Below, in pieces: positions 4,345 through 58,983 of a stretch of DNA of 64,000 bases. The DNA comes from Ranitomeya imitator (lineage: Eukaryota). A model generated the notes under the pieces. The model saw only the letters and a list, made by a program, of their open reading frames with translations, was not told the DNA's origin and did not search any database. The stretch lies in NCBI RefSeq assembly GCF_032444005.1, contig NC_091291.1:10540001-10604000 (forward strand), written 5' to 3'. Numbering within the stretch: the stretch's first letter is position 1; each line of letters starts with the position of its first letter. A program made the translations under genes and the position numbers.

Positions 4345-4381
4345 ATGGCTTCCAAGAACCTCCTGGGGCTGATGGTGGCAG
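4345..4381 (+). CDS. TIL-A coding exon 1: signal peptide N-half MASKNLLGLMVA
   Basis: ATG at 4345, 37 nt, phase-1 donor G|GTGAGT; acceptor at 4321 upstream. Confidence 0.85.
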
Positions 4382-4507
4382 GTGAGTCATAGAATGGCCA
4401 AATAATGCACCATTTCCATTAAGTGACCTCCCAGCCTTCCCTCATTGTGTCTCGTGTATATCAGAATTACTGTTTTGCATTAATATTATTTTTCGTGTTA
4501 TTTTCAG

Positions 4508-4546
4508 TATGTTTTTTGTGTCTGATTGAGCGGAATACAGCTACAA
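4508..4546 (+). CDS. TIL-A coding exon 2: signal peptide C-half (V)CFLCLIERNTAT
   Basis: Acceptor TTATTTTCAG|, donor A|GTAAGT, 39 nt, phase 1-1; keeps the frame into the TIL exon. Confidence 0.8.
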
Positions 4547-5326
4547 GTAAGTGATCACTATGTAATCCACCGCACCTTCTCATGAAGCCTAAGATTGAAC
4601 GTGCCCGGGACAGAATTTTGTAGCCAAACATGGTATTGAGAGTATCGTATAACTGTCCAATTATAGAAAATGATAAGACAACTGGATCATTTATGCAATG
4701 CTGACATTATAATGGACAGATCATTCTTCTACAAAACCGTAACACTCTCATAGGGGATTTGCTAAGAACTATTGGAGGTCCAACTCTAGATCGAAGGGTC
4801 TGTGGTGGCCACTGATCGAAGCTGAACCAGGACTTGTTCTGATAGCAACAACCTATCCAAGGGTCAAAGTCATCATGGAAAACCAGTTTAGAAACCGGGG
4901 AGAAATCCTCGATATCATAAAAGATTTTCTGGTTGTAAATATCTAAGGGTTTCTCAACTCTTGATTAGTTGATGTCAGCTCACGATCTCTCTGTATTTGG
5001 CTTCCGAAACTTGGGTGACCAACTGGTATTTGCGGGTGAAGGTGCCCTTAGCCATATATATCCGCTATAGGAGAACTTTGGTGCTAAATGTTGGTTATTT
5101 GTTGGATAGGCTTGGTTTTCAAGAGTAGAAGTTGGTTATGTTCCCCAGTGAATAGCAGTTGAGGCATCTAATCTATGACATACATATGCCCTAATAGGAT
5201 CGATGAAATATGGGTTGACTTCACAAGACCCATCCTATGTTTTTAACTCTTCGCCATTACTTATCTCCAGTTTTTACTGCCATTGGCTTAGTTTTGCAAA
5301 CAGTTATTGGTTTATCACTCCCCTAG

Positions 5327-5700
5327 GTATTCGATGCCCAAGAAACAGCATCTACGAGTGCAAACCCCTCTGCTACAACACTTGTGACAATCTCAATGCT
5401 ACATCTTGTAAGAAGTCCTGCACCACTCAGTGTCACTGTATAGAAGGATATGTCTATGATTCTGAAAATTACGACAACTGCGTCCCTATATCCTCCTGTA
5501 AGGTCAACTGTCCACCATACATGACTTTTGTTGAATGCACCAAGACTCCCCAGGAAACCTGCGAAACCCTGGGAATCAAATATCAGGAGGGTGAAAAATG
5601 CATGCCGCGATGTGTATGTATCCCAGACTATGTTCTGTCAAATGAAATCGAACCACGATGTGTGAAGAAGACTAAGTGCCCCCAGATTACTTTCCAATGA
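5327..5700 (+). CDS. TIL-A terminal exon: two tandem TIL domains (10-Cys and 8-Cys); secreted serine-protease-inhibitor-like protein, 149 aa spliced
   Basis: Acceptor CTCCCCTAG|. CPRNSIYECKPLCYNTC..CKKSCTTQCHCIEGYVY..NCVPISSC matches TIL spacing, and a second domain CPPYMTFVEC..RCVKKTKC follows. The three exons total 450 nt, in frame. Confidence 0.92.
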
Positions 5701-5891
5701 CACTGCCTGGTCATAAAAGGATTTATTTTGCTCATCAGCCAGAAAAAGAATTTTAAGAAACAACAGCTATCCCATCTATAGACTATTAAGTGGAATTGCA
5801 ATACCAGACCAAGCCTCTGTATACGAGTGGCACTGTTTCCGAAAAGGAGTAGACCCTTTCTTTCTAATTTATGAGACCTCCTCATCCGTTT

Positions 5892-5897
5892 AATAAA
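5892..5897 (+). terminator. Probable polyadenylation signal of TIL-A
   Basis: AATAAA about 190 nt after the stop codon. Confidence 0.55.
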
Positions 5898-6199
5898 AGA
5901 TTGTAAGCTACAATGTGAAGAATATTTTCAAAATCCTTCATTTTTTATGTAATATTTGTTTTACAAAGGTCAAATGACAATTAACAATAAACCTTTATAT
6001 AAAGATATAAAGAGTCTTCTAATGAATTAAGTAATGAAAATTAATGTGTGTGACACAGTGTTATAGATCTCATAGTGATATCCCTGAAGGCTTAACTGGG
6101 CCATTGGAGAGAGGGAGGCCAGTCCCAGTTGGTCCCGTTACATTTGTGCTTTTGATGGTACAGGACTTAAGGTAAAATGCATTGTGAGCCAATATAAGG

Positions 6200-10570: not shown

Positions 10571-10628
10571 TCTGCAGTTACAGAAAGTAAATGGAAGGTG
10601 AATATCAATCCTCTTGAACGTACAAGTA

Positions 10629-11801: not shown

Positions 11802-11838
11802 ATGAAATGGATATTCTCTGGTTGCCTTGTAATTGTTG
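11802..11838 (+). CDS. TIL-B coding exon 1: signal peptide N-half MKWIFSGCLVIV
   Basis: Acceptor AATTTGTAG| at 11789, ATG at 11802, 37 nt (same length as TIL-A), phase-1 donor G|GTAAGA. An upstream donor AAG|GTAAGT at 11188/11189 may end a non-coding exon. Confidence 0.78.
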
Positions 11839-11889: not shown

Positions 11890-13220
11890 ACATTTTATCT
11901 ATTTATCTAATATCCATTCATCTATAATCTATCTATCTATTATCTATCAATTTATCTTGTATCTATCATCTATCTATTATCTATCTATCTGTTATCCATC
12001 TATTATTTGTTTATCTATCATCTATCATCTATTTATCATCTATCTATCTATTATCTATTATCAATCTATTATCTGTCTATTATCAATCTATTATCTATCT
12101 ATCTATTATATATCTATTATCTATCTATCTATTATCAATCTNNNNNNNNNNNNNNNNNNNNNNNNNNNNNNNNNNNNNNNNNNNNNNNNNNNNNNNNNNN
12201 NNNNNNNNNNNNNNNNNNNNNNNNNNNNNNNNNNNNNNNNNNNNNNNNNNNNNNNNNNNNNNNNNNNNNNNNNNNNNNNNNTTATCTATCATCTATCATC
12301 TATTTATCATCTATCTATCTATTATCTATTATCAATCTATTATCTGTCTANNNNNNNNNNNNNNNNNNNNNNNNNNNNNNNNNNNNNNNNNNNNNNNNNN
12401 NNNNNNNNNNNNNNNNNNNNNNNNNNNNNNNNNNNNNNNNNNNNNNNNNNNNNNNNNNNNNNNNNNNNNNNNNNNNNNNNNNNNNNNNNNNNNNNNNNNN
12501 NNNNNNNNNNNNNNNNNNNNNNNNNNNNNNNNNNNNNNNNNNNNNNNNNNNNNNNNNNNNNNNNNNNNNNNNNNNNNNNNNNNNNNNNNNNNNNNNNNNN
12601 NNNNNNNNNNNNNNNNNNNNNNNNNNNNNNNNNNNNNNNNNNNNNNNNNNNNNNNNNNNNNNNNNNNNNNNNNNNNNNNNNNNNNNNNNNNNNATTATCT
12701 ATGTATTACGGTATCTATCTATCTATCTATCTATCTACTATCAATCTATTATCTATCTATTATCTATCTATTATCTATCCATTATCTATCTATTATCTAT
12801 TTATTATTATCATCTATCTATTATCTATTATTTATCTATTATCCATTATCTATCTATTATCTATTATCTTTCTATCATCTATCTATTTTCTATCTATTAT
12901 CAATCTATTATCTATCTATCTATCTATCATTTATCTATTGCTATCTATTATCTATTTATTATTATCTACCTNNNNNNNNNNNNNNNNNNNNNNNNNNNNN
13001 NNNNNNNNNNNNNNNNNNNNNNNNNNNNNNNNNNNNNNNNNNNNNNNNNNNNNNNNNNNNNNNNNNNNNNNNNNNNNNNNNNNNNNNNNNNNNNNNNNNN
13101 NNNNNNNNNNNNNNNNNNNNNNNNNNNNNNNNNNNNNNNNNNNNNNNNNNNNNNNNNNNNNNNNNNNNNNNNNNNNNNNNNNNNNNNNNNNNNNNNNNNN
13201 NNNNNNNNNNNNNNNNNNGA
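11890..13220. repeat. (TATC)n-type microsatellite tract with three assembly gaps (12142-12281, 12351-12693, 12972-13218)
   Basis: ATCT/TATC runs flank N runs. Confidence 0.9.
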
Positions 13221-13242: not shown

Positions 13243-13275
13243 GTCTCCCCTGTGCCCTTTCTTACATTCTCTCAC
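13243..13275 (+). CDS. TIL-B coding exon 2: signal peptide C-half (G)LPCALSYILS
   Basis: Acceptor TTTCTCTTTCAG|, donor C|GTAAGA, 33 nt, phase 1-1; hydrophobic continuation of exon 1. Confidence 0.75.
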
Positions 13276-14976: not shown

Positions 14977-15033
14977 TGGAGAATAGCACACCAGCACCGA
15001 CTACAGGCCAGAATGAGACACCTTCTGATAATA
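14977..15033 (+). CDS. TIL-B exon 3: Thr/Pro/Ser spacer (L)ENSTPAPTTGQNETPSDN
   Basis: Acceptor TTCTACTTCCTGCAG|, donor A|GTGAGT, 57 nt, phase 1-1; two N-glycosylation sequons. Confidence 0.8.
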
Positions 15034-15388: not shown

Positions 15389-17020
15389 GTGACACCACTG
15401 TTTCACCCAGAACGCAAAAGACCTTCATTAACACTATCGATTCACCTAAGAAATCCTAGACTTTTATTGACATCACTACTTCACCTAACGAACCAGAAAA
15501 TTTCATTAGTATCACTGCTTTTTCTAAGGAGACAGAGACTTCTTTAGACATCACTGCTTCGACCAAGGAACCAGAGAGTATAATTGAAACCAATGCCTTA
15601 GACAAAAATGTTGACATTCATTGACATCACTGCACCACCCAAAGAGAAAAAGACTTTTGTGGACATCACTCCTTTACCCAAGAAACCTGAAACTTTTATT
15701 GACACCACTGCTTCTCCTAAGAAGACGTAGCTTTTCTTCGACATCACTGCTTTATCTAAAGAACCAGAGATACTCATTGAAACCACGGCTTTATTCAAAC
15801 TTTCAAAGATGCAGAGACTTTCAAACACATTATTTCTGCAGCCAATGAACCAGAGAATTTCATTGACACCACTTCCTCACCCAAGGACATGGATACTTTC
15901 ATTAGAATAACTCACCCAAGGACCTGGAAACTTCTTAAGCAAAGAACCTGGAGTCTTTCATTAACACCACATTTTTACCTAAAGACCTGGATGCTTTCAT
16001 TTCTTCACCCAAGGACCAGGAGACTTTAATTGACACCACTTCTTCAACCAATAATCTGGAGATTTTCATTTGTACCACTTCTTCACCCAAGGACCTGGAG
16101 ACTTTAATTGACACCGCTTATTCACCCAAAGACCTGTAGACTTTTTTTACACCACTTCTTCACCCAAGGACCTGTAGATTTTCATTGGCATCACTTCTTC
16201 ACCCAAGGACCTGGAGACTTTCATCGACACCATTTCTTCACTCGAGGACCTGGAGACTTTACTTGACACCACTTCTTCACCCAAGGACCTGGAGATTTTC
16301 ATTTTATACCACTTTTTCACCCAAGGACCTGGAGAATTTCATTGGCATCACTTCTTCACATAAGGACCTGGAGATTTTTACTTGCATCACTTTTTCACGC
16401 AATAAGCGAGAGACTTTTATTGGCATCACTTCTTCATCCAAAATCATGGATATTTTTATTGGCAGCACTTGTTTACCCACAGGCATGGAGAATTTCAGTA
16501 GCTTTACTTATTCACCCAAGTACCTGGAGACTTTCATTAGCATCACTTCTTCATCCAAAATCCTGGAGATTTTTATTGGCATCACTTGTTTTCCCACGGA
16601 CATTGAGAATTCCATTGACATCACTTCTTCACTTAAGGACCTGAAGACTTTTATTTGCATTACTTTTTTTAACCTGGAGACTTTCATTGGCATAACTTAT
16701 TCCCTTGTTCATCCAAGGACCTGGATAATTTAATTAGTATTACTTATTCCCTTAAGTACCTGGAGACTTTTGTTGACACCAATTCATCATCCAAAGACCT
16801 GGAGACTTTCATTTACACCAGTTCTTTACCCAAGGACCTGGAGACTTTCGTTTACACCACTTCTTTACCCAAGGACCTGGAGACTTTCATTGACACCACT
16901 TCTTTACCCAAGAACCTGGATACATTTATTGGCATAACTCCTTGATCCAAAGACTTGAGACCTTCATTGGAATCACTTCTTCACCCAATGACCTGTAGAC
17001 TTCTTTTGGCACCTCATCTT
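15389..17020 (+). pseudogene. Decayed mucin-like (PTS) pseudo-exon made of 39-bp/13-aa repeats, consensus FIDTTSSPKDLET
   Basis: Phase-1 acceptor GAGTTCAG|GT GAC ACC ACT is in frame with exon 3. In-frame TAG at 15457, further GAG>TAG changes near 16137 and 16174, and frameshifts. No clear donor. Confidence 0.6.
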
Positions 17021-17181
17021 CACCTTTAGTTATGCATATCCAACTACTTCATATTTTATTTAGTTTTTAATTTCGTTTTTTCTTTCCAAACTTCATTTTT
17101 TAATTTAGATGCATTGTAATAGTAAAAGCTTAGTTTCTGAAGTGGATATAACCCTTGCATTTACCATTGTTTTGTAACCAG

Positions 17182-17370
17182 ATTCCACCATAACCTGCCC
17201 TCCTGACGCTGAAGTATATAACTGTACAGGGTGCTGGTCAGAATGTCCCATTGCAAGAAATATTTGTAGCAGTGAATGCAAGGAAGGATGCACATGTAAA
17301 ATTCTCGGATATTTCCTCCATAATGACAATTGCTTTCCACTTTCTCAGTGCCCGTACCTCCCACTGAAGG
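17182..17370 (+). CDS. TIL-B exon: TIL domain 1 (10 Cys)
   Basis: Acceptor TTTTGTAACCAG|, donor G|GTAAGA, 189 nt. STITCPPDAEVYNCTGCWSECPIARNICSSECKEGCTCKILGYFLHNDNCFPLSQCPYLPLK. Missed by the ORF track because there is no in-frame start. Confidence 0.9.
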
Positions 17371-18495: not shown

Positions 18496-18675
18496 ATAAA
18501 ATATGTCCGGGTAACATGGTGTGGAGAAATTGCTCAGTTTGTAAAGATTATTGCCCAGTTCAAGGACAAAGGTGTATAAAGAAGTGCAGGACGGGGTGTG
18601 TTTGTAAGGGCGACTTTTTGCTATATTATGGGAGATGTATCCACAAATCTGCCTGTCCACAGAGATTCGCTTTTG
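18496..18675 (+). CDS. TIL-B exon: TIL domain 2 (10 Cys)
   Basis: Acceptor TTCATTCTTTAG|, donor G|GTAAGA, 180 nt. KICPGNMVWRNCSVCKDYCPVQGQRCIKKCRTGCVCKGDFLLYYGRCIHKSACPQRFAF. Confidence 0.9.
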
Positions 18676-19732: not shown

Positions 19733-19911
19733 TTCCCAGCTGTCCCGATGGCCAGAGTTGGCATTACTGTGCTCCGTGCGAATCCTTTTGCTTTCCCGAA
19801 AGTAAATGTGGGAGGGAATGTGTACAAGGCTGCACGTGTGAAGACGAAGATTTGGTATGGTATGATGGAAAATGCATCAAAAGAGAAAAATGTCCTTCAC
19901 TTCCTTCTCAG
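19733..19911 (+). CDS. TIL-B exon: TIL domain 3 (10 Cys)
   Basis: Acceptor CATTATTCTAG|, phase-0 donor CAG|GTAATT. PSCPDGQSWHYCAPCESFCFPESKCGRECVQGCTCEDEDLVWYDGKCIKREKCPSLPSQ. Confidence 0.88.
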
Positions 19912-20431
19912 GTAATTTATTTTGCTTTGTTTTGTAATATTGTCTTGGTGGTTATGGTTGAATGGCACTAAACCAAAGAGAAAAAGCCAATCCAATGATG
20001 GATGATGGATGGATCGATTGGTGGTTGTCTGCCACCAGTAGTTTCCTGTACAGTGACCTCTTCTGTAGTATTGCATGGCGCCAATCGATGAACAGCCATA
20101 TAGCGTGTCCTTAGCCCATCCAATCAGTAGCTAATATGGCCAATCTGGTTTATATAACCTCCTGTAAGATGTCTAGATCCCTAAATAAGGCATAAATACA
20201 GGTGCTGACCAGTGAGGACAACCTGTGTAATATCTAATAATTGATCATTGGCTTCTTTAATAGGATTGTTCCGGAAAGAGAAAAATAGCAACGACACTTT
20301 CTTCCTAAAACAGCAGCTCAGCTCCTTTGAAGTGAATGCCAGAGAAAATCTGTAAATGGGTAACATGCTGTTTTTGGAGGAAAGTCATGTTTTAGTATTC
20401 ATGGACTAAGCCCTTTCAGAAAGAGTATGTT

Positions 20432-20981: not shown

Positions 20982-22227
20982 ATGTTAAAATGTTGTATTC
21001 GAATTTCAATGTCTATGTCAGGACTAGAATTGGTGCAAATGGATTCGAACGTTGGTCGGTAGAATGGGAGATGGAGTAACGCCTCTTAACCGATGGTGTC
21101 CGCAGATCTTCTTTTGATTGGCTGGCCTGGAATGATGTCACATGGTCATCATGCCACAATAATGGTGTTATGCCAGGCTAAAAAAATCAAAAGAAGGTCC
21201 ATGGACACCGTCAGGCAAGAAGCAGTAGGCCCTCTCCTATTCCAACGGCCACAGACTACTGTTATGGCCACTGAAACGGGACTTAGAATTAAATTCACAC
21301 CCATTCTAGTCTGGATCATAACCAGTACATTCGGGAGGTTTTCCAGAGAATGGGATGCATATATGATGCCCACCAGACTCCTCTTAGCTCATGATATAGA
21401 AGCGAGAGATGATGGATAAACCCTTTAATAGTCAAGATTCTGAATCCATAGGTGAAGAAATGTCGCCCCAAACTGGTCCAGTGCAGATTTTCGGGTGGTG
21501 AGACCAGTCTGATATGGTCTAAGTTTTGACTTGTATTTTCTCTTAGCCCTAGATGTGAATCATCCCTCCATGATGACGTCTCCCAGCACCACATCAGACG
21601 AGATCCTCCACCCATCACACTGCTAAAAATGAAGTACAAGAACCTCCTCTGAAACCCTTAGGATATGTTCACACGTTGCCTTTTTGCAACGTTTTTTTTT
21701 CGGTGGCTTTTTTTTCTATGTGGAAAAAGAGAAAAATAATGGAAGAATGTCAATTTTTTTTCAGCTTCTTTGTTGCAGTTTTTTTTACTCATTTACATGA
21801 ATGGATTTTACTAATTCACTTGAATGGATTTAAAAGCATGATAAAATGTATAAAAAATGCATGAAAAAAAGTACCAAAACATGTATGAAGCATCTATCCT
21901 GCCAACATTCTGAATTTTTCATGCATAAAAAGAAAACAAAAACGCTGCAAAAAAGCATTGTGTGAACATAATATTAAACCTCATTACTGCCTGTGATTAT
22001 AAGTGAATGATCCTTATAAAAATACAATGATTTCACTGTGATAATAAACTGCAGCTGATTCCACCTCGTTAGTTTGTACTGTAATCATTTTTACACTAGA
22101 AAGAGAGAGCAAGACAGCGCAATATCCCGTCCTGAATAAGCAGAGACAGCAGCATAATAAAGAGAAGATGGCCCAATGAAGACCACACCGGTGACTGGAG
22201 CGAAGAAAACTACTGATCAGGAATGGG

Positions 22228-39212: not shown

Positions 39213-42200
39213 TTAACATGGAGTAATAAATAAAATGATTGCCCTGAATAAAGCAAAACCAGAGGCAAAGCCATAAGCAGTGCAAGAGGCTGTACCAGGA
39301 AAGGCACCAGAGGCTGCATCAGTTGCAACATCAGAGGCAGAAGCAGAAAAAGCACCAGAGGCAGCTCCAAAGGCATAACCAGAGGCAGAACCAGAAAAAG
39401 CATCAGAGGCAGCTCCAAAGGCAGAACCAGAAAAAGCACCAGAGGAAGCTCCAGAGGCAGAACCAGAAAAAGCACCAGAGGAAGCTCCAAAGGCAGAACC
39501 AGAGGCAGAACCAGAAAAAGCACCAGAGGAAGCTCCAAAGGCAGAACCAGAAAAAGCACCAGAGGAAGCTCCAAAGGCAGAACCAGAGGCAGAACCAGAA
39601 AAAGCACCAGAGGAAGCTCCAAAGGCAGAACCAGAGGCAGAACCAGAGAAAGCACCAGAGGCAGCTCCAAAGGCAGAACCAGAAAAAGCACCAGAGGCAG
39701 CTCCAAAGCCAGAACCAGAGGCAGAACCAGAAAAAGCACCAGAGGCAGCTCCAAAGGCAGAACCAGAGGCAGAACCAGAAAAAGCATCAGAGGCAGCTCC
39801 AAAGGCAGAACCAGAAAAAGCACCAGAGGAAGCTCCAAAGGCAGAACCAGAAAAAGCACCAGAGGAAGCTCCAAAGGCAGAACCAGAGGCAGAGCCAGAA
39901 AAAGCACCAGAGGAAGCTTCAAAGGCAGAACCAGAAAAAGCACCAGAGGAAGCTCCAAAGGCAGAACCAGAGGCAGAACCAGAAAAAGCACCAGAGGAAG
40001 CTCCAAAGGCAGAACCAGAGGCAGAACCAGAGAAAGCACCAGAGGCAGCTCCAAAGGCAGAACCAGGAAAAACACCAGAGGCAGCTCCAAAGGCAGAACC
40101 AGAGGCAGAACTAGAAAAAGCACCAGAGGCAGCTCCAAAGGCAGAACCAGGAAAAGCACCAGAGGCAGCTCCAAAGGCAGAACCAGAGGCAGAACCAGAA
40201 AAAGCACCAAAGGCAGCTCCAAAGGCAGAACCAGAGGCAGAACCAGGAAAAGCACCAGAGGCAGCTCCAAAGGCAGAACCAGAGCCAGAACCAGAAAAAG
40301 CACCAGAGGCAGCTCCAAAGGCAGAACCAGAAAAAGCACCAGAGGCAGCTCCAAAGGCAGAACCAGAGGCAGAACCAGAAAAAGCACCAGAGGCAGCTCC
40401 AAAGGCAGAACCAGAGGCAGAACCAGGAAAAGCACCAGAGGCAGCTCCAAAGGCAGAACCAGAGGCAGAACCAGAAAAAGCACCAGAGGCAGCTCCAAAG
40501 GCAGAACCAGGAAAAGCACCAGAGGCAGCTCCAAAGGCAGAACCAGGAAAAGCACCAGAGGCAGCTCCAAAGGCAGAACCAGAGGCAGAACCAGAGGCAG
40601 AACCAGGAACAGCACCAGAGGCAGCTCCAAAGGCAGAACCAGAGGCAGAACCAGGAAAAGCACCAGAGGCAGCTCCAAAGGCAGAACCAGAGGCAGAACC
40701 AGAAAAAGCACCAGAGGCAGCTCCAAAGGCAGAACCAGAGGCAGAACCAGAAAAAGCACCAGAGGCAGCTCCAAAGGCAGAACCAGAGGCAGAACCAGAA
40801 AAAGCATCAGAGGCAACTCCAAAGGCAGAACCAGAGGCAGAACCAGAAAAAGCACCAGAGGCAGCTCCAAAGGCAGAACCAGAGGCAGAACCAGAAAAAG
40901 CACCAGAGGAAGCTCCAAAGGCAGAACCAGGAAAAGCACCAGAGGCAGCTCCAAAGGCAGAACCAGAGGCAGAACCAGAAAAAGCACCAGAGGCAGCTCC
41001 AAAGGCAGAACCAGAGGCAGAACCAGGAAAAGCACCAGAGGCAGCTCCAAAGGCAGAACCAGAGCCAGAACCAGAAAAAGCACCAGAGGCAGCTCCAAAG
41101 GCAGAACCAGAAAAAGCACCAGAGGCAGCTCCAAAGGCAGAATCAGAGGCAGAACCAGAAAAAGCACCAGAGGCAGCTCCAAAGGCAGAACCAGAGGCAG
41201 AACCAGGAAAAGCACCAGAGGCAGCTCCAAAGGCAGAACCAGAGGCAGAACCAGAAAAAGCACCAGAGGCAGCTCCAAAGGCAGAACCAGGAAAAGCACC
41301 AGAGGCAGCTCCAAAGGCAGAACCAGGAAAAGCACCAGAGGCAGCTCCAAAGGCAGAACCAGAGGCAGAACCAGAGGCAGAACCAGGAACAGCACCAGAG
41401 GCAGCTCCAAAGGCAGAACCAGAGGCAGAACCAGGAAAAGCACCAGAGGCAGCTCCAAAGGCAGAACCAGAGGCAGAACCAGAAAAAGCACCAGAGGCAG
41501 CTCCAAAGGCAGAACCAGAGGCAGAACCAGAAAAAGCACCAGAGGCAGCTCCAAAGGCAGAACCAGAGGCAGAACCAGAAAAAGCATCAGAGGCAACTCC
41601 AAAGGCAGAACCAGAGGCAGAACCAGAAAAAGCACCAGAGGCAGCTCCAAAGGCAGAACCAGAGGCAGAACCAGAAAAAGCACCAGATTCAGCTCCAAAG
41701 GCAGAACCAGAAAAAGCACCAGAGGAAGCTCCAAAGGCAGAACCAGAGGCAGAACCAGAAAAAGCACCAGAGGAAGCTCCAAAGGCAGAACCAGAGGCAG
41801 AACCAGAGAAAGCACCAGAGGCAGCTCCAAAGGCAGAACCAGAAAAAGCACCAGAGGAAGCTCCAAAGCCAGAACCAGAGGCAGAACCAGAAAAAGCACC
41901 AGAGGCAGCCCCAAAGGCAGAACCAGGAAAAGCACCAAAAGGCAGCTCCAAAGGCAGAACCAGAGGCAGAACCAGAAAAAGCACCAGAGGCAGCTCCAAA
42001 GGCAGAACCAGAGGTAGAACCAGGAAAAGCACCAGAGGCAGCTCCAAAGGCAGAACCAGAGGCAGAACCAGGAAAAGCACCAGAGGCAGCTCCAAAGGCA
42101 GAACCAGAGGCAGAACCAGAAAAAGCACCAGAGGCAGCTCCAAAGGCAGAACCAGAGGTAGAACCAGGAAAAGCAGCAGAGGCAGCTCCAAAGGCAGAAC

Positions 42201-42748
42201 CAGAGGCAGAACCAGGAAAAGCACCAGAGGCAGCTCCAAAGGCAGAACCAGAGGCAGAACCAGAAAAAGCGTCAGAGGCAACTCCAAAGGCAGAACCAGA
42301 GGCAGAACCAGAAAAAGCACCAGAGACAGCTCCAAAGGCAGAACCAGGAAAAGCATCAGAGGAAGCTCCAAAGGCAGAACCAGGGGCAACATCAGAGTTA
42401 GGACCCGTGTAAGTACCAGAAACAACACCAGTTGCAGCTTCAGAGGCAGAACCAAAAACAGCATCAGAGGCAGTACCAGAAGAGCAACAAACAAGGCCCC
42501 AGAGGCAGAAACAGAGGCTCCATCAGAGGCAGCACCAGAAACCACATCATCTGCAGCTCTAAAAGCAGTACCAGCACCAGCACCATAGGCAGTTCCAGAG
42601 ACAGAAGCATCGCCATAGGCAGCACTAGAGGCATCATCAAAAAAAGCACCTGGAAAGCCCCTAATAGCCGCTCCAGAAACAGCAGAGAAAGTACCAGAGG
42701 AAGCATTTGGCAGAATGAGTGATAAAGTGTAAGTATAGCAGTTCCATG
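39213..42748 (-). CDS. Candidate Gly/Ala/Ser/Phe-rich silk-like repeat exon, about 1178 open codons (SGSAFGAASGAF repeats), with two compensating indels; coding status unproven
   Basis: Phase-1 acceptor CATCTTCCCAG|CA at 42748 is in frame with the ORF and there is no stop to 39213. Non-repetitive ends stay G/A/S/Y-rich (SSAAYGDASVSGTAYGAGAGTAF). A 1-nt loss near 42483 and a 1-nt gain near 41939 cancel. No signal exon was found. Confidence 0.4.
39290..42700. repeat. Modular 12-nt repeat array (36/48-nt units) with a 780-bp internal tandem duplication
   Basis: Modules GCAGAACCAGAG, GCAGAACCAGAA, AAAGCACCAGAG and GCAGCTCCAAAG. Diagnostic variants recur 780 nt apart (40141/40921, 40261/41041, 40801/41581). 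Confidence 0.95.
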
Positions 42749-42984: not shown

Positions 42985-43280
42985 TCATGAATTATCTATT
43001 ATCTATCGATCATCTNNNNNNNNNNNNNNNNNNNNNNNNNNNNNNNNNNNNNNNNNNNNNNNNNNNNNNNNNNNNNNNNNNNNNNNNNNNNNNNNNNNNN
43101 NNNNNNNNNNNNNNNNNNNNNNNNNNNNNNNNNNNNNNNNNNNNNNNNNTATTATTTATATATCTATCATATATTTATTATCTATTTATCTATTATCTAT
43201 CTAGTATCTATTATCTATTATCTATCTATTATCTATTAATTTATCTAAAATATTTTTTCTGATTATCTATTTATCTACCC
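42985..43280. repeat. (TATC)n tract with assembly gap 43016-43149
   Basis: ATCT runs flank an N run. Confidence 0.85.
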
Positions 43281-43559
43281 ATTGCACAATACTGAGCTTT
43301 CTTGAAGCTTTGAGCGATTGATGAAGACTCAGTATTATTACAAGTTACATAAACACTGTACACTATGGGTGAATAAAGGAAGGTTTGTATGTACAGAGTA
43401 ACCTTTGTTTTATTTATCTGTATCAATAAATCAGTAGAACGTGCAACAATAAGAAAAAGTGTAGAATATTTTATCAGAGAAATTCACATTTAGTTCCAGA
43501 TGTAAATTCTGCCCCATCGCTATATACTGACTCTACCCCATATTGTGTTCCTTCTTCAG

Positions 43560-43925
43560 GTGTCGTTCAGTCCAACGTCTTATTGTTACAACCTCCGGCC
43601 GTAGCCGCCATGCTCGGTTCCTCTGTTAATTTGAGTTGCCACATGCAGGTAAATGGCGTGAAACTGGTCCGGGTGAATTTATACTGGTTAATTCCATTAC
43701 CCAACAACAACAAATTCAAAGAACGGCTGCATCCGAAAACCAAAAACGAAAGTGACCGGAGCAGAAAATCTCGTCTGATCTATCCGAACTTTACAGAAGA
43801 CCTATCTCTGACCATCGAGGATGTCCAACTGTCCTACACCGACACCTACATATGTGAAACGTCCCTGGTGATAGGAGAGAAGAATAAGCTTGTTACTGGG
43901 AATGGAACATATCTACTGGTTTATG
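43560..43925 (+). CDS. Ig V-set domain exon with germline-joined J-like G strand
   Basis: Acceptor CCTTCTTCAG|, donor G|GTGAGC, 366 nt, phase 1-1. Shows QPP, GSSVNLSC, LYW, LSLTIEDVQLSYTDTYIC and TGNGTYLLV. Confidence 0.92.
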
Positions 43926-44384
43926 GTGAGCAAAATAGCTACTATCTATCTAGAAAAACAAGCAGCACTCCTAGTAATGTGAAAAAGTAAGGGACTTATA
44001 TTAACCCATGCGGAAACATTTCGGTTCGATAATAGAGCTTTTCTCCAGAGAACCGAAACTTTGCCACATGTGCTAATAAACAGCCCTTAACTTTTTAATG
44101 TTTCGGCTCTCCCAGCTGTCAAACTGCGAGTCTTTCCCAAACCATGAACATTCACAGTATATATAGATCAGATGATCACACCTTTAAGTCCCCTGAGGGG
44201 ACTATTAAATCCAGTAAAAAAAAAAGTTTTTAAAAATATGAAAAAATAAAATATAAAAGTTCAAATCATCCCCCCTTGTGTCCCGTTAAAAATAAGGCAA
44301 TTTTAGAAAATTAAAATACACATTTTTGGCATCACTAAAACATAAAAGTCCAATATATCAAAATATGAAGAAAATGAAAACTGT

Positions 44385-45710
44385 ACTAATGTCTGGTGGA
44401 AAAACTAAAACTTCACATCACCCTGAAAACACCATCCCCACCATCAAACATGCTGGGAGCAGCTTCATGCTGTGGGGAGGCTTTTCTTCAGCAGGGGCAG
44501 GGAAGCTGGTCAGAGTTGATGGGAAGAAAGATGGAGCTAAGTACAGGGCAATCCTGGAGGAAACTGTCATGATCCAGGCCAGGTTTTGTTTAGTCTTTTC
44601 CGGTCTAGTCATGTCAGGAGTTATCTTTCACAGCCTCGTTCCTGTGTCCGGTCTGCTATATGTCTGTGCTGCTACCTGTGTTCAGTGCCACCTATATTGT
44701 TTGCCTTCAGCGTGCTAGCTGGCTCTGGTGAGTTCCTGATCTGTCCTGCTGCATTCAGTTAATCTGACCCGTGTTTCTTTATCTATCTACTTGTCTCTGC
44801 TCCTCCTGACTTCCCTGATTGTTTGGATTTCCCAGTACCTAACTTTGGCTTGACTCAGACCTGATTTTGTCTCTCTCTCCTCTGATATTCCTGCTACTGA
44901 CCGGTACTGACCCTTGATCTCCTCTGACTCTGTGCCTCAGTTTTTCCATTTTGCACTGCGTTTTCCTCTGGTATTGACTCGGCTCTCTGACTATTCTGCT
45001 GCCACCTAGTGGTGGCTTCGCTGTACTGCTGTGGGTCTGCTTCTCTGCGGGATATTCAGCTCACTCTCCACTCTGTAGCTATCTAGTGGAGCTTGCGTTA
45101 CTCTGCATTAACCCTCAGTAGTACAGTGTGAAAGAAACATTATAGAGGCTACAAAATACTTGAGAATGGGGCATAAGTTCACCTTCCAGCAGGACAAGGA
45201 CACCAAACATCCTGCCAGAGCTACAATGGAGGGTTTAGATCAGAGCATATTCCAGTGTGTGAACGGCCCAGTCACCGTCCAGACCCAAATCCCAGAGAAT
45301 CTACGACAAGACGCGAAAATGACTGATCACCAACATCTCAATACAATCTCTCTGAGCGAGAGTGAGGGGGCAAAGAAGAAGGGGCAAAATGTCACCTTTA
45401 GGTGTGCAAAGCTGGAGAGACAGATCCCAGAAGACTGCAGAGAAAGCTGGAAGACAGACTCTAAAAGACTGCAGAGAAAGGTGGGAGAGACACACCCCAA
45501 AAGACTGAAGCAGTAATTACAGTGAAAGGTGGTCCTACAAAGTATTGACTCGGGGGGCTGAACACAAATGCTCCTCACAATTTTCAGATTTACAACTTTC
45601 AAATATTTAGAAAACCTTGTACCATTTCCTTTTACGCCTCACATTTAAGTTTTGGGGGTAAAGTGGAAAAAATGTGTAAAAGTTCTCAGAATATGAATAC
45701 TTTTTCAAGT
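44385..45710 (+). mobile_element. Tc1 transposon remnant (catalytic half) interrupted by a solo LTR
   Basis: PTIKHAGSSFMLWGGFSSAGAGKLVRVDGKKDGAKYRAILEE, resuming after the insertion with FTFQQDKDTKH and ending KGGPTKY*. Confidence 0.88.
44565..45133 (+). mobile_element. Solo LTR (569 bp) nested in the Tc1 transposase
   Basis: Starts TGTCATGATCCAG and ends GTGTGAAA (TGACA with one change). 5-bp target-site duplication GAAAC at 44560-44564 and 45134-45138. Confidence 0.8.
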
Positions 45711-45919
45711 ATTTTTTATACCTTGTTTATGCCCTGTGAATGTTCACGGCTTGAAAAAGGTTCACACGGTTTGAAGAACCAAAACATCGCCCACACAGGG
45801 GTGAATGAAGACCACAGGTTTTTTTTCTTACTATGTCATATATGAACTGCAGTCATTTTTTCCATCTATCTATCTCTTATTCTGGCAATTTACTTCTTCC
45901 TACATTTAATAATTTACAG

Positions 45920-46186
45920 ATGACTTGATGACATTTATGAACCAGAGTGACATCGTCTGTAAAGTTGAGGTACAAGCACCGCAGGACGTGGATCTAGTTT
46001 GGGATCTTCAGGGTCAGGAGGACAACGTTTGGTCCAGTGTGATCCCGGCTTCACACAATTCATACTGGATCGTAAGTGTGATGATGAACTGGACTCAACG
46101 GTGCCAAGAGAACAGGACCTTCACCTGTAAGCTCAGGTACAAGGGGCAGAGTCTGGTGGAACACAGTATGGAGGCCCCCTGTGCAG
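45920..46186 (+). CDS. Ig constant-type (C1-like) domain exon
   Basis: Acceptor AATTTACAG|, donor G|GTAAAG, 267 nt, phase 1-1. DIVCKVEV..DLVW..SYWIVSVMMNWTQRCQENRTFTCKLRY. Confidence 0.88.
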
Positions 46187-46931
46187 GTAAAGTATGCCGA
46201 GACAGGAGTTATATTACATTATTCTGTATGCTAGTATATACTGTATATTGTATATACCGTAAGGGATCGTATCTCTGGTGCTTACACAAGGATCCAGTTC
46301 ATAGGTTCAAAACAAGCGTGCCGTTTACTAAATGTCCATAAACCATCCAGCTTACTTCTGGGTACAACAGGCATAACAGAACCAAAGTGGAAAATAAACA
46401 GTCCATGTACAACACGGGTCACCTGGTTGAATGTCTGACCTACACACAGCAGAAACTGAGCCATAGAAGCAAGGTCTTTGCACCTTGCACAAACCACACT
46501 AATGATACAGCCGAATTCCTATATAACTGCCGTACCACAACACCCCTGGGTCAGGATAAGTGAGCAGCCAGTCCCACCCATCTCTTTGACTGCTCGGAAA
46601 CCCATCCCTGGACACATCCTATTAGCGCTCGCAGCCATATAAGGGCTGGAGCCTGCTTTCCGGGCTTATATCACCGAGGCTACCAACCTCGATGATACGT
46701 ATCTCCCCTCGAGAATCTGTCTGGCAGCCACAGAGGAGATATAGGACTGAAAATATTCTTAATCCGCTCATACAATGTGAATAACTGTCCTGATGATATA
46801 TGGTAGCGTAAGGGAAAATATTAAAAAGATGCATGCATGGGTCTTCTTGTGATAGTGTGTCTGCAAAGAGCGGTGTGTCTGGTAATAATACTCAGTTTTG
46901 ATAAGAAGCATCTGGTGTTAAAAGTTGACTG

Positions 46932-52620: not shown

Positions 52621-52755
52621 TAATATTAATGACTATGGATGTAGAATGGGAGGTCAGGTAAAAATTGTGGAGGGGTCACAATATAGTATGTCTGACATAT
52701 GCATGCACCTCGCTGCCTTCCCTGAACACATGCAGCTACGGTATATACAGGTGCT

Positions 52756-54707: not shown

Positions 54708-55993
54708 TGGATCGCCCCCAGACACAGGGCCACGAGTTCTCGGTACCGGGCCTCTCTGGTTCGGTTCTGGGGCTGTCACGGTGGCAAGACCTGGTTCGCG
54801 ACCCTGCTAAGGGGCGTCCAATGAAAGTAGTGGAACAGTCTGTCAGGGATTCGTGACGCCACCTGTGGTACTCGGTCAGGGTGACCGACGGTGCTGTGGG
54901 GTCCGCTGGGGTGATGAAATGGCAAATGGATGCTATACCTTCCCACAGGTGAAGTGTGTTCCCAGGGCTTCCCAGTAGGGTAGATGGTGATGGTGTAAGG
55001 CGCAGTCAATAATGAGGACACAAGGTTGCAGTCTCTTTACCTCTTTACTGAAGAGTAGACTTCAGGATCCTCAGTCCATAGTACGTTTAACAGGGCTATC
55101 AGAGACCGGCCGGTCCGATGGGCACATCCAGAGTTTCCTTTGCAGATGGAAATCGTTGCCCACCAATAGCGCCTGTGTGTTGTAGTCCTACCCTGCTGAG
55201 CATTCGGGATAGTCCTCACAACTGCTGTTCTCGTTCGTTCGTTCTCTACAGCTCTCTCTCTCTCTCATTCTCTTTAGTTCCAGATGTTACTAGTTTCTCG
55301 TCCCCCAGTATGTTTTGGCTAGGACGCACCCGTATGACGGGAAGGCTTGGAGGTCTTCCGGGACCCTAGAGACGCCCCTCTCCCAATGTTGCCCCCTATG
55401 TCTTCTTAGGAAATCTAAGGTAGACAGCCAACCTATAATTAACTGTCTGGCGGAGTTTGAAGTAAGGCCTGAAGTCAGTTACTCCTACGGTGTTCCGGCC
55501 ACCGACTACGCGCCTCAGTAAGATGTTGCCTCTGTCTCTCTCGGCACGACTCTTACTGGCTCTCCTTTGTGCTTGATCTCGTTTACACTGTTCCACAATA
55601 TCCTTCCCTTCATGTCTCTCTCCTGGATACCGCCGCAGGTGTGCAGGTGCGGTTCCGTTACGTTCTGTTCTGTTCGCTAGGCACCTGCCAGGTTCCCACG
55701 CCTGACAGGGACCCCCCCTGTGCCTTCTCCCTGCAACACCCCCTGCCACGGGATGTTGCCTGAATCCAACCCAGTCAGCTTCTGACTAACTTCCTCCCCA
55801 GCCCCTAGTTTTACCAGTGTGAGGAGTGGCCCAATAAATAAAGCCTTTTTCTCCCCCTAGTGGCCGGAGTGTGAAGTGTAATGTGTTCTGGTGATACCTG
55901 GTCAGGAGAACTCTTTAGTGCCATCAGACGTACCGCCACTCCCCTTAGTGGCAGAGTGCAATACTGCAACGACCAGGTCTCTGGGGCACTGCA
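54708..55993. mobile_element. Gypsy-type solo LTR (1286 bp)
   Basis: Imperfect terminal inverted repeats TGGATCGCCCC...GGGGCACTGCA; 4-bp target-site duplication TGTA at 54704-54707 and 55994-55997. Confidence 0.78.
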
Positions 55994-56899
55994 TGTACAT
56001 AAAACTTTTTTTTGAGACTTGCCTGGAAAAAGGAAGGACCTTGTCTTGTCGTGGTTCTGTTGCTCACAATTTATGGATGCAGGGATATATAAATAGATAT
56101 ATTACTCATCCATAAATTGTGCCAACAGTTCCTACAAGAGGATTGATAATTGTAGACGTTTCACTTCCCCTTGAACAATATTAGTCTTCTCTATCAGTGG
56201 GATTTGAGCCACTAGAATCTGGACATTTCCTTCATCGTGAACCCAATAATAACCACATCTTCACCACATTTCATAGATACTTTTTATTGTTATTACATAG
56301 ATTGGAACCAGAATAATTCTGGATTATAAGACGAAATCACAGAAATAAGTGACAGAATCTTTAACATACTGAATATTACAGGGATCGTTCTTAGAGTTAC
56401 AGAGTTGATGATAAACCAGAACTCGAAAACATCGTAAAAACATTATCTTCTTTTATTTATTCAACATCACACAAGACGAACAAGATAAACCGGAATCTTT
56501 GAGTTTATATTGTCTATTATGTCTCATGTTGGATATATAAAGAAGATACTGATATTATGACGTCCTCAAGTGCAGGTTTATCATTAACACTGCAAACATT
56601 TACCCTGGAACCCCAGCCCGCACCTTGCCCCAAGGCTGCTTAATGGATGGTTCGGGATTACATACATAGGAGGGTTGAGGTGATTAATTGCTTTCATCCT
56701 ATGCTTCTTCTAAAATGCCTAATCTGGAAACGGGGAAGATATTGTATCAGTAGACCATCCAGAAAGATCACCGACTCTGTAGGCAATATTCATGTCAACT
56801 CCATCCAAACTTGTCCAAATATTCTTTTCTGATTCACTCTGTCCTAGACGAGTGGCAGAAAGAGGGGCTTATATAGAAAGTCATTACCCATTGTCTTGA

Positions 56900-57625
56900 C
56901 CAGGTTTTTTAGGGTCTATTCTACTTGATCTTCTAGGGTCCATTCTATTTGGTCTTCTATGATCTATTCTACTTGGTTGTCTAGGTTCTATTTTACTTGG
57001 TGTTTGAGGGTCTATTCTACTTTGTCTTCTAGGGTCTATTCTACTTGGTCTTCCAGAGTCTATTCTACTTGGTCTTTGAGGGTCAATTCTATTTGGTCTT
57101 TTAGGGTCTATTCTACTTGGTCTTCTAGGATCTATTCTATAAGGTCTTCCAGAGTCTATTCTACTTGGTCTTTGAGGGTCAATTCTATTTGGTCTTTTAG
57201 GGTCTATTCTACTTGGTCTTCTAGGATCTATTCTATAAGGTCTTCCAGAGTCTATTCTACTTGGTCTTTGAGGGTCAATTCTATTTGGTCTTCTAGGGTC
57301 TTTGTACTTGGTCGTCTAGGGTCTGTTCTACTTGGTCTTTGAGGGTCTATTCTATTTGGTCTTTTAGGGTCTATTCTACTTGGTCTTCTAGGGTCCATTG
57401 TATTTGATCTTCTATGATCTATTCTACTTGGTCATCTAGGGTCTATTTTACTTGGTGTTTGAGGGTCTATTCTACTTGGTCATCTAGGGTCTATTTTATT
57501 TGGTTTTCTAGGGTCTATTCTAATTGGTCTTCTAGGGTCTATTCTAATTGGTCCTCTAGGGTCTATTGTATTTGGTCTTCTAGGGTCTATTCTACTTGGT
57601 CTTTGAGGGTCTATTCTACTTGATG
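56900..57625. repeat. 24-bp minisatellite with a 96-bp higher-order unit
   Basis: Unit TCTAGGGTCTATTCTACTTGGTCT; the TTCCAGAGTC variant recurs every 96 nt. Confidence 0.9.
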
Positions 57626-57803
57626 GCTCTTTTACAAATACCAATTTTAATTCTCACATATGTGATAATATACAGATACATGCTGAAGCTACTAACAAAT
57701 GAAAGAATCTAACATTTCATGGCAATAATCAACAAGGGACTGAACGTTTATGGCCACCGCGTGGACCAGCACTGTAGACCTATAAAGCAGCTGTGACAAA
57801 TTC

Positions 57804-58144
57804 TTAGGGAATGGGACAATCTTCTATCTTCACACACTTAAAATTGGAAAATATATAGCCGTCATCACAGACACATGAAGGAACGTTGCTGCAGGTGTCA
57901 GGGTTATGTCCTTCTTCACAGTTTGGTTGGCAGGTGGATGCGTAGGGCTCATAGTGCATGTTAGCTGGACATTTTCCTTCGCAATCTTCGGGCTTGACGC
58001 AGCCTGCATTGGATGGGATAAGGCCATCATCACATCTACAGCCATAATATTGATGGTAGGTACAGAGTTTCCCCGGGTAGTTAGGGCTGTTACAGGTTGT
58101 ATCACATCCAGTAATGAGTCCATAATGTGTGTTTAGAGGACAAA
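57804..58144 (-). CDS. TIL-C terminal exon: two 8-Cys TIL domains; 140-aa secreted protein when spliced
   Basis: Acceptor TTCGGTTCTAG|, phase 1. CPLNTHYGLITGCDTTC..CTYHQYYGCRCDDG..CVKPEDC and CPANMHYEPYASTCQPNC..CSNVPSCVCDDGYIF..CVKIEDC. The three exons total 423 nt, in frame. Confidence 0.9.
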
Positions 58145-58584
58145 CTAGAACCGAAGAAGATAAAAATCTCACGTTAAGGAATTGTTACCGACCACAAAGT
58201 CCACTTTAGTCAATTACAATTTTTGTCTGACATTTTTGGCCCGAACACTACAGGGTGAATATTGGGATCTTCCCAAGTTCCAACAAATAACTACAGCTTG
58301 TTGGGTCTCCCATGTGATTAGAGTTCATCTCACATGATCAGTAAATTTACGGAATGTGTCAATCAAGCTGTCAATCAAGCTGTCAATCAAGCTTTACAAT
58401 TATTATTATCCGCAGCAAATCGTCGTGTGTAAACTACAGAGGAGCTGCCGAGAACAATGACAGTTCCTGTGCATGGAAGGATCTTATTAATGATCATTCT
58501 GTGCACAAAGAATTCTGGTCTGTCTGTGTAAACAGGTGTCAATCAGCAGTCGTTCAACAGCCAACAATTGTAAGTTCTGCTCAC

Positions 58585-58626
58585 CTATTTTCTTTATACT
58601 GGAACAGTCGGTCTGCCACTGTAACA
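58585..58626 (-). CDS. TIL-C exon 2: (V)LQWQTDCSSIKKI
   Basis: Acceptor CTCGTCACAG|, donor G|GTGAGC, 42 nt, phase 1-1. Confidence 0.75.
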
Positions 58627-58943
58627 CTGTGACGAGATTAAAGAGCTTTTATTATGATGATTATTTTGCAACTATTATTTTTATCTGTGTTATTATTCAG
58701 GGATCAGATAAAGGTAAGAGAAGGTTTCATCCTTCATATCAAATGTATCAGGACATGAAGAAAACACACAAAAAAACATAACAGCAAGTATATAGTACTG
58801 CAAAATAGAACATGTTGAAATGCTGTTATCAGAGATGTATCAAACACAAAGAAAATAATAGATTGTATCAAGAATCATAGATGTTCCGAAAATGTCTAAA
58901 AGTATTAAACAATAATAAAGTACAGATGTGAAATAAGACTCAC

Positions 58944-58983
58944 CAGCCATCAAGAAGACAACGGAAAGTGTCAGGAAGCCCAT
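58944..58983 (-). CDS. TIL-C exon 1: signal peptide MGFLTLSVVFLMA
   Basis: ATG at 58983, 40 nt, donor G|GTGAGT. Confidence 0.85.

What the first reader, a model, noticed from the sequence alone, without database searches (positions are those of the whole stretch)
4345..58983. Dispersed cluster of three secreted TIL-domain genes sharing one exon blueprint
Seen: TIL-A, TIL-B and TIL-C each begin with a 37, 37 or 40-nt phase-1 leader exon, then a 39, 33 or 42-nt phase-1 exon, then TIL modules (7 domains in total). The domains are very divergent from each other. Known: TIL domains occur in amphibian skin protease inhibitors such as Bombina BSTI and in gel-forming mucins. Inference: this is an old, locally expanded family of secreted skin or mucosal defence proteins that an ORF scan largely misses.
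Basis: partly seen in the sequence, partly recalled or inferred. Interest (0 to 1): 0.7.

Follow-up and report, generated by a model that had tools for sequence, protein, structure and literature searches.

The report
Three small secreted TIL-domain frog genes
The window from the mimic poison frog Ranitomeya imitator holds three real, intact small genes for secreted proteins made only of trypsin-inhibitor-like (TIL) domains, an ordinary old frog family; two are already in RefSeq and the third is expressed but apparently unannotated.

Summary
The window is Ranitomeya imitator (GCA_032444005.1).

- **TIL-A:** exons of 37, 39 and 371 nt. It translates exactly to RefSeq XP_069597279.1 (149 aa, 2 TIL domains).
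- **TIL-B:** it starts with the predicted 37- and 33-nt exons. It equals XP_069599014.1 (244 aa). A 226-aa isoform splices on to a last exon, probably at 21547.
- **TIL-C (minus strand):** exons of 40, 42 and 338 nt. No R. imitator protein was found for it. Spliced RNA contigs from four studies show both predicted junctions exactly.

A profile scan finds exactly seven TIL domains. The products carry no VWD or C8 domains, so they are not pieces of a mucin. An immunoglobulin-family gene lies between TIL-B and TIL-C.

TIL-A and TIL-B have orthologues across frogs. TIL-C has one only in Anomaloglossus.

The most likely function is Ascaris-type serine-protease inhibition, as in the frog skin inhibitors BSTI and LL-TIL. 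This is inferred, and the tissue is unknown.

All assembly gaps lie in TIL-B intron 1 or between genes.

The parts
4345..4381 (+). TIL-A exon 1 (37 nt, ATG, ends in phase 1): first half of the signal peptide, MASKNLLGLMVA
   Evidence: Sequence; the spliced model equals RefSeq XP_069597279.1 / P0001
4508..4546 (+). TIL-A exon 2 (39 nt, phase 1 to 1): rest of the signal peptide
5327..5700 (+). TIL-A exon 3: two TIL domains (A1 with 10 Cys, A2 with 8 Cys) and stop TGA at 5698-5700. AATAAA signals at 5892 and 5986.
   Evidence: Pfam TIL E 1.5e-15, two stretches
11802..11838 (+). TIL-B exon 1 (37 nt, phase 1): MKWIFSGCLVIV
   Evidence: The annotated gene starts here. Exact match to P0066.
12142..13218 (.). 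Three N runs separated by (TATC)n microsatellite, all inside TIL-B intron 1; length only estimated
   Evidence: No exon touches them. Not filled or looked up.
13243..13275 (+). TIL-B exon 2 (33 nt, phase 1 to 1): rest of the signal peptide
14977..15033 (+). TIL-B exon 3 (57 nt, phase 1 to 1): Ser/Thr/Pro-rich linker ENSTPAPTTGQNETPSDN with N-glycosylation sequons.
   Evidence: Present in both RefSeq isoforms P0063 and P0066. Absent from the orthologous frog transcript P0011.
17182..17370 (+). TIL-B exon 4: domain B1 (189 nt, phase 1 to 1)
18496..18675 (+). TIL-B exon 5: domain B2 (180 nt, phase 1 to 1)
19733..19971 (+). TIL-B exon 6: domain B3. Isoform X2 splices out at 19911 (donor GTAATT). 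Isoform X1 reads on to TAA at 19969-19971, adding a hydrophobic 19-residue tail.
21547..22170 (+). Probable last exon of TIL-B isoform X2 (CCC TAG gives the final Pro and stop), with 3' UTR; poly(A) signals about 21973-22160. The right end is approximate.
   Evidence: Only acceptor+CCN+stop candidate between 19.9 and 39 kb, with a strong polypyrimidine tract. Inferred, not seen in reads.
58944..59060 (-). TIL-C exon 1: 5' UTR and the 40-nt coding part 58983-58944 (MGFLTLSVVFLMA, phase 1). TATAAA at 59090-59085.
   Evidence: Contigs reach 59049-59090 and the joint at 58944 is seen in 3 runs
58585..58626 (-). TIL-C exon 2 (42 nt, phase 1 to 1)
   Evidence: Joints 58626|58944 and 58144|58585 with GT..AG on the minus strand
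57590..58144 (-). TIL-C exon 3: two 8-Cys TIL domains (C1, C2), stop TAA at 57806-57804, and 3' UTR. ATTAAA at 57651-57646. Contigs run about 60 nt past 57650.
   Evidence: Pfam TIL E 1.8e-14, two stretches
63332..64000 (-). Exact second copy (669 nt, cut by the window end) of 58846-59514, that is the TIL-C promoter, exon 1 and 98 nt of intron 1, lying 4486 nt upstream
   Evidence: Either a recent duplication or an assembly artefact; not resolved.

Best explanation
These are three separate, intact, transcribed genes of Ranitomeya imitator. Each encodes a small secreted protein made of a signal peptide followed by nothing but TIL (trypsin-inhibitor-like, Ascaris-type, MEROPS I8) domains:
- TIL-A: 149 aa, 2 domains.
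- TIL-B: 226 or 244 aa, a glycosylated linker and 3 domains.
- TIL-C: 140 aa, 2 domains.

Shown:
- The exon structures.
- Identity of TIL-A and TIL-B to RefSeq models.
- Splicing and expression of TIL-C.
- The TIL fold.
- Conservation of TIL-A and TIL-B across Anura.

Inferred: after signal-peptide cleavage the proteins act outside the cell as tight-binding, substrate-like ('standard mechanism') inhibitors of serine proteases. Each domain would present the loop that follows its fifth cysteine.
- A1 (CKKSC), B2 (CIKKC) and B3 (CGREC) have Lys or Arg at the position aligned with P1. The alignment is to the Ascaris-type CTREC loop and to the engineered frog LL-TIL_mut1. This points to trypsin-like targets.
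- A2 has lost the Cys3-Cys5 pair.
- C1 and C2 have both lost the Cys2-Cys6 pair. Silkworm BmSPI38/39 lack the same pair, and they inhibit microbial subtilisin-type proteases rather than trypsin.

The shared two-mini-exon, phase-1 leader and the phase-1 domain exons of TIL-B fit descent from one ancestral gene by gene duplication and exon duplication.
For: **Species and annotation**
- Searches give the species and the RefSeq models.
- The TIL-A and TIL-B models equal P0001 and P0066 exactly.

**Domain content**
- Pfam finds only TIL domains in the products.
- The profile scan finds exactly seven domains.

**TIL-C expression and fold**
- Spliced contigs with both predicted junctions occur in 4 runs from 4 studies. 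Their word depth is far higher than that of intron-bearing contigs in the same runs.
- An orthologue exists, with a nearly identical leader.
- The AF2 model has mean pLDDT 74. Its single domains superpose on LL-TIL 8HWU (rmsd 1.8 A, TM 0.74) and on AMCI 1CCV (rmsd 2.0 A, TM 0.77).

**Sequence matches to solved inhibitors**
- A2 matches BSTI 1HX2, E 2e-4.
- B3 matches LL-TIL_mut1 8J3Q, E 1.6e-4, with CGREC aligned on CTREC.

**Cysteine losses**
- These are read from the alignments.
- The disulfide map, and the loop bounded by bridges II-VI and III-V, come from PMC3606364.
- The BmSPI38/39 precedent comes from PMC10004685.

**Other**
- BSTI and LL-TIL are frog skin trypsin inhibitors (PMC3721222, PMC4567993).
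- The N-termini have Kyte-Doolittle 11-residue maxima of 2.6-3.3.
- Orthologues and positional domain clades span Anura.
Against: - No inhibition assay exists for any of these proteins.
- P1 is assigned by alignment only.
- The loop after Cys5 is very variable among orthologues. That fits reactive-site variability, but it also fits lack of constraint.
- A conserved N-glycosylation sequon (NAT/NST/NLT) lies just before Cys5 of A1 and could hinder docking of a protease.
- Three of the seven domains lack one of the two disulfides that brace the loop.
- LL-TIL itself is only a weak inhibitor (Ki about 16.5 uM).
- TIL domains also serve non-inhibitory roles in mucins, FCGBP and VWF. TIL-C's best sequence matches among solved structures are in fact FCGBP TIL domains.
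- The tissue of expression is unknown.
- TIL-A and TIL-B expression was not checked with reads here.
Confidence: 0.75

Rival explanations
1. The same three genes are real, but the proteins are not protease inhibitors. They would be structural or binding components of mucus, egg coat or seminal fluid, with TIL domains acting as disulfide-rich interaction modules as in FCGBP, mucins, zonadhesin or C. elegans SWM-1-type regulators.
For: - TIL-C's best matches among solved structures are FCGBP TIL domains.
- A1's best match is a MUC2 TIL domain.
- Three domains lack a loop-bracing disulfide.
- TIL-B carries a glycosylated Ser/Thr/Pro linker.
- Automatic names point to zonadhesin, mucin and swm-1.
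Against: - There are no VWD, C8 or long PTS domains.
- The size and architecture match free-standing inhibitors.
- The closest solved small proteins are the true inhibitors BSTI, LL-TIL and AMCI.
- Three loops have a basic residue at the aligned P1 position.
- SWM-1 is itself a protease inhibitor (established knowledge).
Confidence: 0.2
2. The TIL exons are parts of one larger mucin- or zonadhesin-like gene that spans the window.
For: - TIL domains occur in such giant genes.
- Long repeat arrays lie between the TIL genes.
Against: - TIL-A and TIL-B each have their own ATG, signal peptide and stop, and they match separate RefSeq genes.
- TIL-C is on the opposite strand. Its roughly 700-nt spliced contigs end near a TATA box and near a poly(A) signal.
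- V-set and C1-set immunoglobulin exons lie between TIL-B and TIL-C.
- The products have no VWD or C8 domains.
Confidence: 0.02
3. One or more of the three are decaying or silent copies (pseudogenes).
For: - TIL-C is missing from the R. imitator protein set.
- Its promoter and exon 1 are duplicated.
- TIL-B isoform X1 reads through into an intron.
Against: - All reading frames are open and all splice sites are canonical.
- TIL-C is transcribed and correctly spliced in four studies.
- Cysteines are lost only in matched disulfide pairs.
- Orthologues keep the same architecture.
Confidence: 0.03

Closest known systems
BSTI and its Bombina relatives (BMTI, BMSI), frog skin Ascaris-type trypsin/thrombin inhibitors; structure 1HX2
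   Same: Secreted anuran proteins built from the TIL fold. A2 aligns to BSTI over the whole domain (E 2e-4). The loop after Cys5 is basic in A1, B2 and B3, as in BSTI's CDKKC.
   Different: BSTI is a single 60-residue domain from an 84-residue precursor (PMC3721222). The proteins here have 2 or 3 domains. A2, the domain that matches BSTI best, lacks Cys3 and Cys5 and has Glu at the aligned P1 position.
LL-TIL of Lepidobatrachus laevis skin (PMC4567993; structures 8HWU, 8J3Q)
   Same: A hyloid frog TIL peptide that starts IRCP, like mature TIL-A. It is the best solved match for B2 and B3 and a close structural match for the TIL-C model. B3's CGREC loop resembles the CTREC loop of the engineered mut1.
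   Different: It has a single domain with 10 Cys and is a weak trypsin inhibitor (Ki 16.5 uM). No multi-domain form has been described.
Silkworm BmSPI38/BmSPI39 and BmFPI-F, eight-cysteine TIL inhibitors (PMC10004685)
   Same: [quoted passage not shown]
   Different: They are insect proteins with one domain and no close sequence relationship, so the loss of the pair is probably independent. Their anti-subtilisin specificity is only a lead for TIL-C.
TIL modules of gel-forming mucins, VWF, FCGBP and zonadhesin
   Same: Same Pfam domain. FCGBP and MUC2 TIL domains are the best sequence matches among solved structures for TIL-C and A1. The automatic RefSeq names come from this similarity.
   Different: Those TIL modules sit inside VWD-C8-TIL assemblies of giant proteins. 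The proteins here have no VWD or C8 domain and are 140-244 residues long.

Membership tests
TIL / Ascaris-type inhibitor family (Pfam PF01826, MEROPS I8) | Significant match to the TIL domain profile | tested here: met
   Seven domains are found. Whole-protein scores of 52-58 bits exceed the 24.5-bit cut-off. B1 alone scores 23.3 bits and B3 alone 24.5 bits, at the threshold, but both are clear with a family HMM (E 8e-14 and 2e-16).
TIL / Ascaris-type inhibitor family (Pfam PF01826, MEROPS I8) | Ten cysteines forming bridges I-VII, II-VI, III-V, IV-X and VIII-IX | tested here: inconclusive
   A1, B1, B2 and B3 have all ten. A2 lacks III and V. C1 and C2 lack II and VI. Losses occur only as matched pairs. 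The pairing itself was not verified, because no model coordinates were available.
TIL / Ascaris-type inhibitor family (Pfam PF01826, MEROPS I8) | TIL fold | tested here: met
   Domains of the AF2 model of TIL-C superpose on LL-TIL (TM 0.74, rmsd 1.8 A) and AMCI (TM 0.77, rmsd 2.0 A) with probability 1.00. Foldseek E-values are weak (0.0025-0.04) because the domains are small.
TIL / Ascaris-type inhibitor family (Pfam PF01826, MEROPS I8) | Inhibits a protease through the reactive-site loop | not testable with these tools
   There is only an aligned P1 residue: Lys in A1, Lys in B2, Arg in B3, Ser in B1, Glu in A2.
Secreted protein | N-terminal signal peptide | tested here: inconclusive
   Hydrophobic cores have KD(11) of 2.6-3.3, followed by small residues, and orthologues share the pattern. 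No SignalP-type predictor was available.
Gel-forming mucin / zonadhesin / FCGBP type | VWD and C8 domains next to the TIL domain, and long PTS regions | tested here: not met
   Pfam finds only TIL in P0001, P0063, P0066 and P0008. The only PTS-like part is the 19-residue linker of TIL-B.
BSTI-type single-domain skin inhibitors | One TIL domain and a precursor of about 84 residues | tested here: not met
   The proteins have two or three domains and precursors of 140-244 residues.

The most novel reading that the evidence does not exclude
TIL-C would be a gene restricted to dendrobatoid frogs, whose two domains have both lost the Cys2-Cys6 bridge. It would then work like the eight-cysteine insect TIL inhibitors, blocking microbial subtilisin-type proteases (for example those of skin fungi such as chytrids) rather than the animal's own trypsin-like enzymes.

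A Gln59Glu polymorphism in the loop of domain 1, seen in runs of two studies, would then mark a site under host-pathogen selection.

A second, weaker lead: the three-domain, glycosylated product of TIL-B is about 22.7 kDa. It could be the kind of protein behind the never-cloned 22-23 kDa glycoprotein trypsin inhibitors BATI and KPHTI of toad and frog skin.
Probability: 0.12. Interest if true: 0.55.

Novelty: new member of a known kind. Interest (0 to 1): 0.27.

Why it matters
The practical gain is modest.
- **Naming.** Frog genome annotations give this family inconsistent automatic names: zonadhesin-like, mucin-6-like, PCSK5-like, VWF-like, hemocytin-like, swm-1-like. In fact it is one old anuran family of free-standing multi-TIL secreted proteins, with domain-by-domain orthology from Ascaphus to poison frogs.
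- **A missing gene.** TIL-C is an expressed gene that seems to be absent from the R. imitator protein set and could be added.
- **A testable sub-family.** Disulfides have been lost in matched pairs next to the putative reactive loop. This gives a concrete question about protease-inhibitor specificity in amphibian secretions, where the biological role of such inhibitors is still unclear.

Tried and rejected
**One large gene.** Rejected; see the rival explanations.

**Further hidden TIL exons.** A six-frame HMM scan found none.

**Genomic distances and synteny in other frogs.**
- The look-up of encoding contigs returned gene lists but no DNA and no record coordinates for the big genomes.
- Only 'same scaffold' can therefore be stated for Anomaloglossus and Pyxicephalus.

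**TIL-B full-length model.**
- It could not be searched as a joined sequence.
- I recovered it indirectly by using the returned orthologue P0011 as the query.

**BSTI's experimentally determined reactive site.**
- The original paper (PMC2143335) is not held.
- P1 therefore rests on alignment to the Ascaris-type CTREC loop.

**Literature searches.**
- The search for Ranitomeya plus zonadhesin found nothing.
- The search on poison-frog skin transcriptomes found nothing on these genes.
- The amphibian glue paper (PMC11237159) concerns IgGFc-binding-domain PRIT proteins, which are not this family.

**Other dead ends.**
- The protein-atlas search was busy.
- Foldseek E-values for the two-domain model were all above 0.001, and only the single-domain superpositions are informative.
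- Tissue of expression could not be read, because the run records are coded and carry no library text.


Full report
**What the window is.** The third exon of TIL-A, searched by reference, hit a 149-aa RefSeq protein of Ranitomeya imitator at 100% identity. That protein lies on a 150.8-Mb scaffold of GCA_032444005.1. The window has four N runs: 12142-12281, 12351-12693, 12972-13218 and 43016-43149.

**Gaps first.**
- The first three N runs are separated by (TATC)n microsatellite. All three lie between the 37-nt first exon of TIL-B (11802-11838) and its 33-nt second exon (13243-13275).
- They are intronic, so no reading frame crosses them. Only the intron length is uncertain.
- I could not show continuity from reads. 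It rests on three things:
  - Both RefSeq isoforms join the two exons.
  - The R. variabilis orthologue has the same first 23 residues.
  - A transcript-derived orthologue, P0011, has a contiguous N-terminus of the same build.
- The fourth gap lies between an acidic repeat array and an immunoglobulin V exon, outside any TIL gene.
- I filled no gap and looked up none.

**The observation.**
- A cysteine-density scan found five stop-free pieces. Pfam calls TIL (PF01826) in all of them, seven domains in total.
- A family HMM built from these domains and their relatives, run over all six frames, finds the same seven. The next best piece has E 0.22.
- I joined exons only inside local scripts, and only to compare them with proteins that the tools had returned. 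No search tool received a joined model. All searches used single-exon references or returned protein ids.
- The joined TIL-A model is letter-identical to XP_069597279.1 (P0001). The joined TIL-B model is letter-identical to XP_069599014.1 (P0066, 244 aa).

**Corrections for TIL-B.**
- Both RefSeq isoforms contain a 57-nt phase-1 exon (14977-15033).
- An orthologous frog transcript lacks this linker (P0011).
- Isoform X1 (244 aa) reads through the donor at 19911 and ends in a hydrophobic tail.
- Isoform X2 (226 aa, XP_069599015.1) splices at 19911 to an exon that adds one Pro and a stop. The only fitting acceptor in the next 19 kb is at 21547, with poly(A) signals downstream. This exon is inferred.
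- Pyxicephalus has the same pair of isoforms.

**TIL-C.**
- No R. imitator protein was found for its main exon. The only hit was a 146-aa Anomaloglossus protein, 68% identical, whose first 21 residues nearly repeat the predicted two-exon leader.
- That search sees only proteins of 62-196 residues, so a longer annotated form cannot be excluded.
- Fifteen public runs hold the locus. I laid four of them, from four studies:
  - All four show the joint 58144|58585 and three show 58626|58944. Both have CT..AC on the plus strand, which is GT..AG on the minus strand.
  - Two contigs, of 705 and 719 nt, carry both joints.
  - The spliced contigs have word depths of 59-1399. Intron-bearing contigs in the same runs have 3-58.
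  - The run kinds are only guessed to be RNA. The spliced form itself is the evidence.
- The contigs start near 59050-59090, just downstream of a TATAAA at 59090. They end about 60 nt beyond 57650, near an ATTAAA.
- One variant, 58052 G>C, seen in runs of two studies, changes Gln59 to Glu in the loop of domain C1.

**Not one larger gene.**
- TIL-A and TIL-B are separate RefSeq genes.
- TIL-C is on the other strand, with its own transcript ends.
- V-set and C1-set immunoglobulin exons lie at 43.4-46.3 kb, between TIL-B and TIL-C.
- The products contain no VWD or C8 domain.

**Family and age.**
- TIL-A orthologues of 147-156 aa occur in Anomaloglossus, Phyllobates, R. variabilis, Bufo, Engystomops, Pyxicephalus and Discoglossus.
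- TIL-B relatives with three to five domains occur in Ascaphus, Xenopus, Rhinophrynus, Pelodytes and Pyxicephalus.
- A domain tree has few columns, so many forks are unresolved. It still groups A1, A2, the B2 type and the B3 type each across Anura. It places A1 among the B1-type domains. It joins A2 to C1/C2 on long branches, which may be an artefact.
- C1 and C2 are each other's closest relatives, at 42% identity.
- Linkage:
  - All three genes have relatives on one 197-Mb Anomaloglossus scaffold.
  - TIL-A and TIL-B relatives share a Pyxicephalus scaffold.
  - TIL-A and TIL-B have consecutive accessions in R. variabilis.
- The number of domains differs between species. Together with the phase-1 one-domain exons of TIL-B, this fits exon duplication.

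**Likely function.**
- The nearest solved small proteins are true inhibitors:
  - BSTI for A2.
  - LL-TIL and its engineered form for B2 and B3.
  - LL-TIL and AMCI for the predicted TIL-C structure.
- In this family the reactive loop is bounded by bridges II-VI and III-V (PMC3606364).
- By alignment, the residue two places after Cys5 is Lys in A1, Lys in B2 and Arg in B3. B3's CGREC sits on the CTREC of LL-TIL_mut1. This suggests trypsin-like targets.
- B1 has Ser and A2 has Glu at that position.
- A2 has lost III-V. C1 and C2 have lost II-VI. Silkworm inhibitors without II-VI block subtilisin-type microbial proteases but not trypsin (PMC10004685).
- The loop varies strongly among orthologues.
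- All of this is inference. No activity, secretion or tissue was tested.

**Verdict.** The genes are real but ordinary: an old anuran family of free-standing multi-TIL proteins. Two of the three are already annotated under misleading automatic names. The third is expressed and apparently unannotated in this species.

Noticed in passing
window 58846-59514 and 63332-64000: An exact 669-nt duplicate, cut off by the window end, spaced 4486 nt from the original. It copies the TIL-C promoter, exon 1 and the first 98 nt of intron 1. It is either a very recent tandem duplication, which would give a second identical first exon, or an assembly artefact.
   Followed up: partly
window 58052: G>C in contigs of two runs from two studies. 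It changes Gln59 to Glu in the loop after the fifth-type cysteine of TIL-C domain 1.
   Followed up: partly
window 43430-43987 and 45913-46338 (+): Stop-free pieces with Pfam V-set (E 2.7e-8) and C1-set (E 0.0014, below cut-off) matches. They indicate an immunoglobulin-superfamily gene between TIL-B and TIL-C, as another first-reader note says.
   Followed up: partly
window 39285-42585: A 3.2-kb array of 36/48/84/132-nt units with almost no T on the plus strand, so all three plus frames are open. One frame reads PEAEPEKAPEEAPKAE repeats. Openness alone is not evidence of coding.
   Followed up: no
window 15389-17024: A 39-nt tandem array (about 26 or more copies, 73% matches) inside the TIL-B intron between the 57-nt linker exon and the first TIL exon. 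Both RefSeq isoforms skip it.
   Followed up: partly
window 44296-44715 and 45112-45513 (+): Stop-free pieces whose wording recalls Tc1/mariner transposase fragments. That is my reading from memory, and Pfam gave no hit.
   Followed up: no
P0001, P0002-P0007, P0067, P0069 (TIL-A orthologues): An N-glycosylation sequon (NAT, NST or NLT) just before the fifth cysteine of domain 1 is kept in every orthologue seen, from Discoglossus to Ranitomeya.
   Followed up: partly
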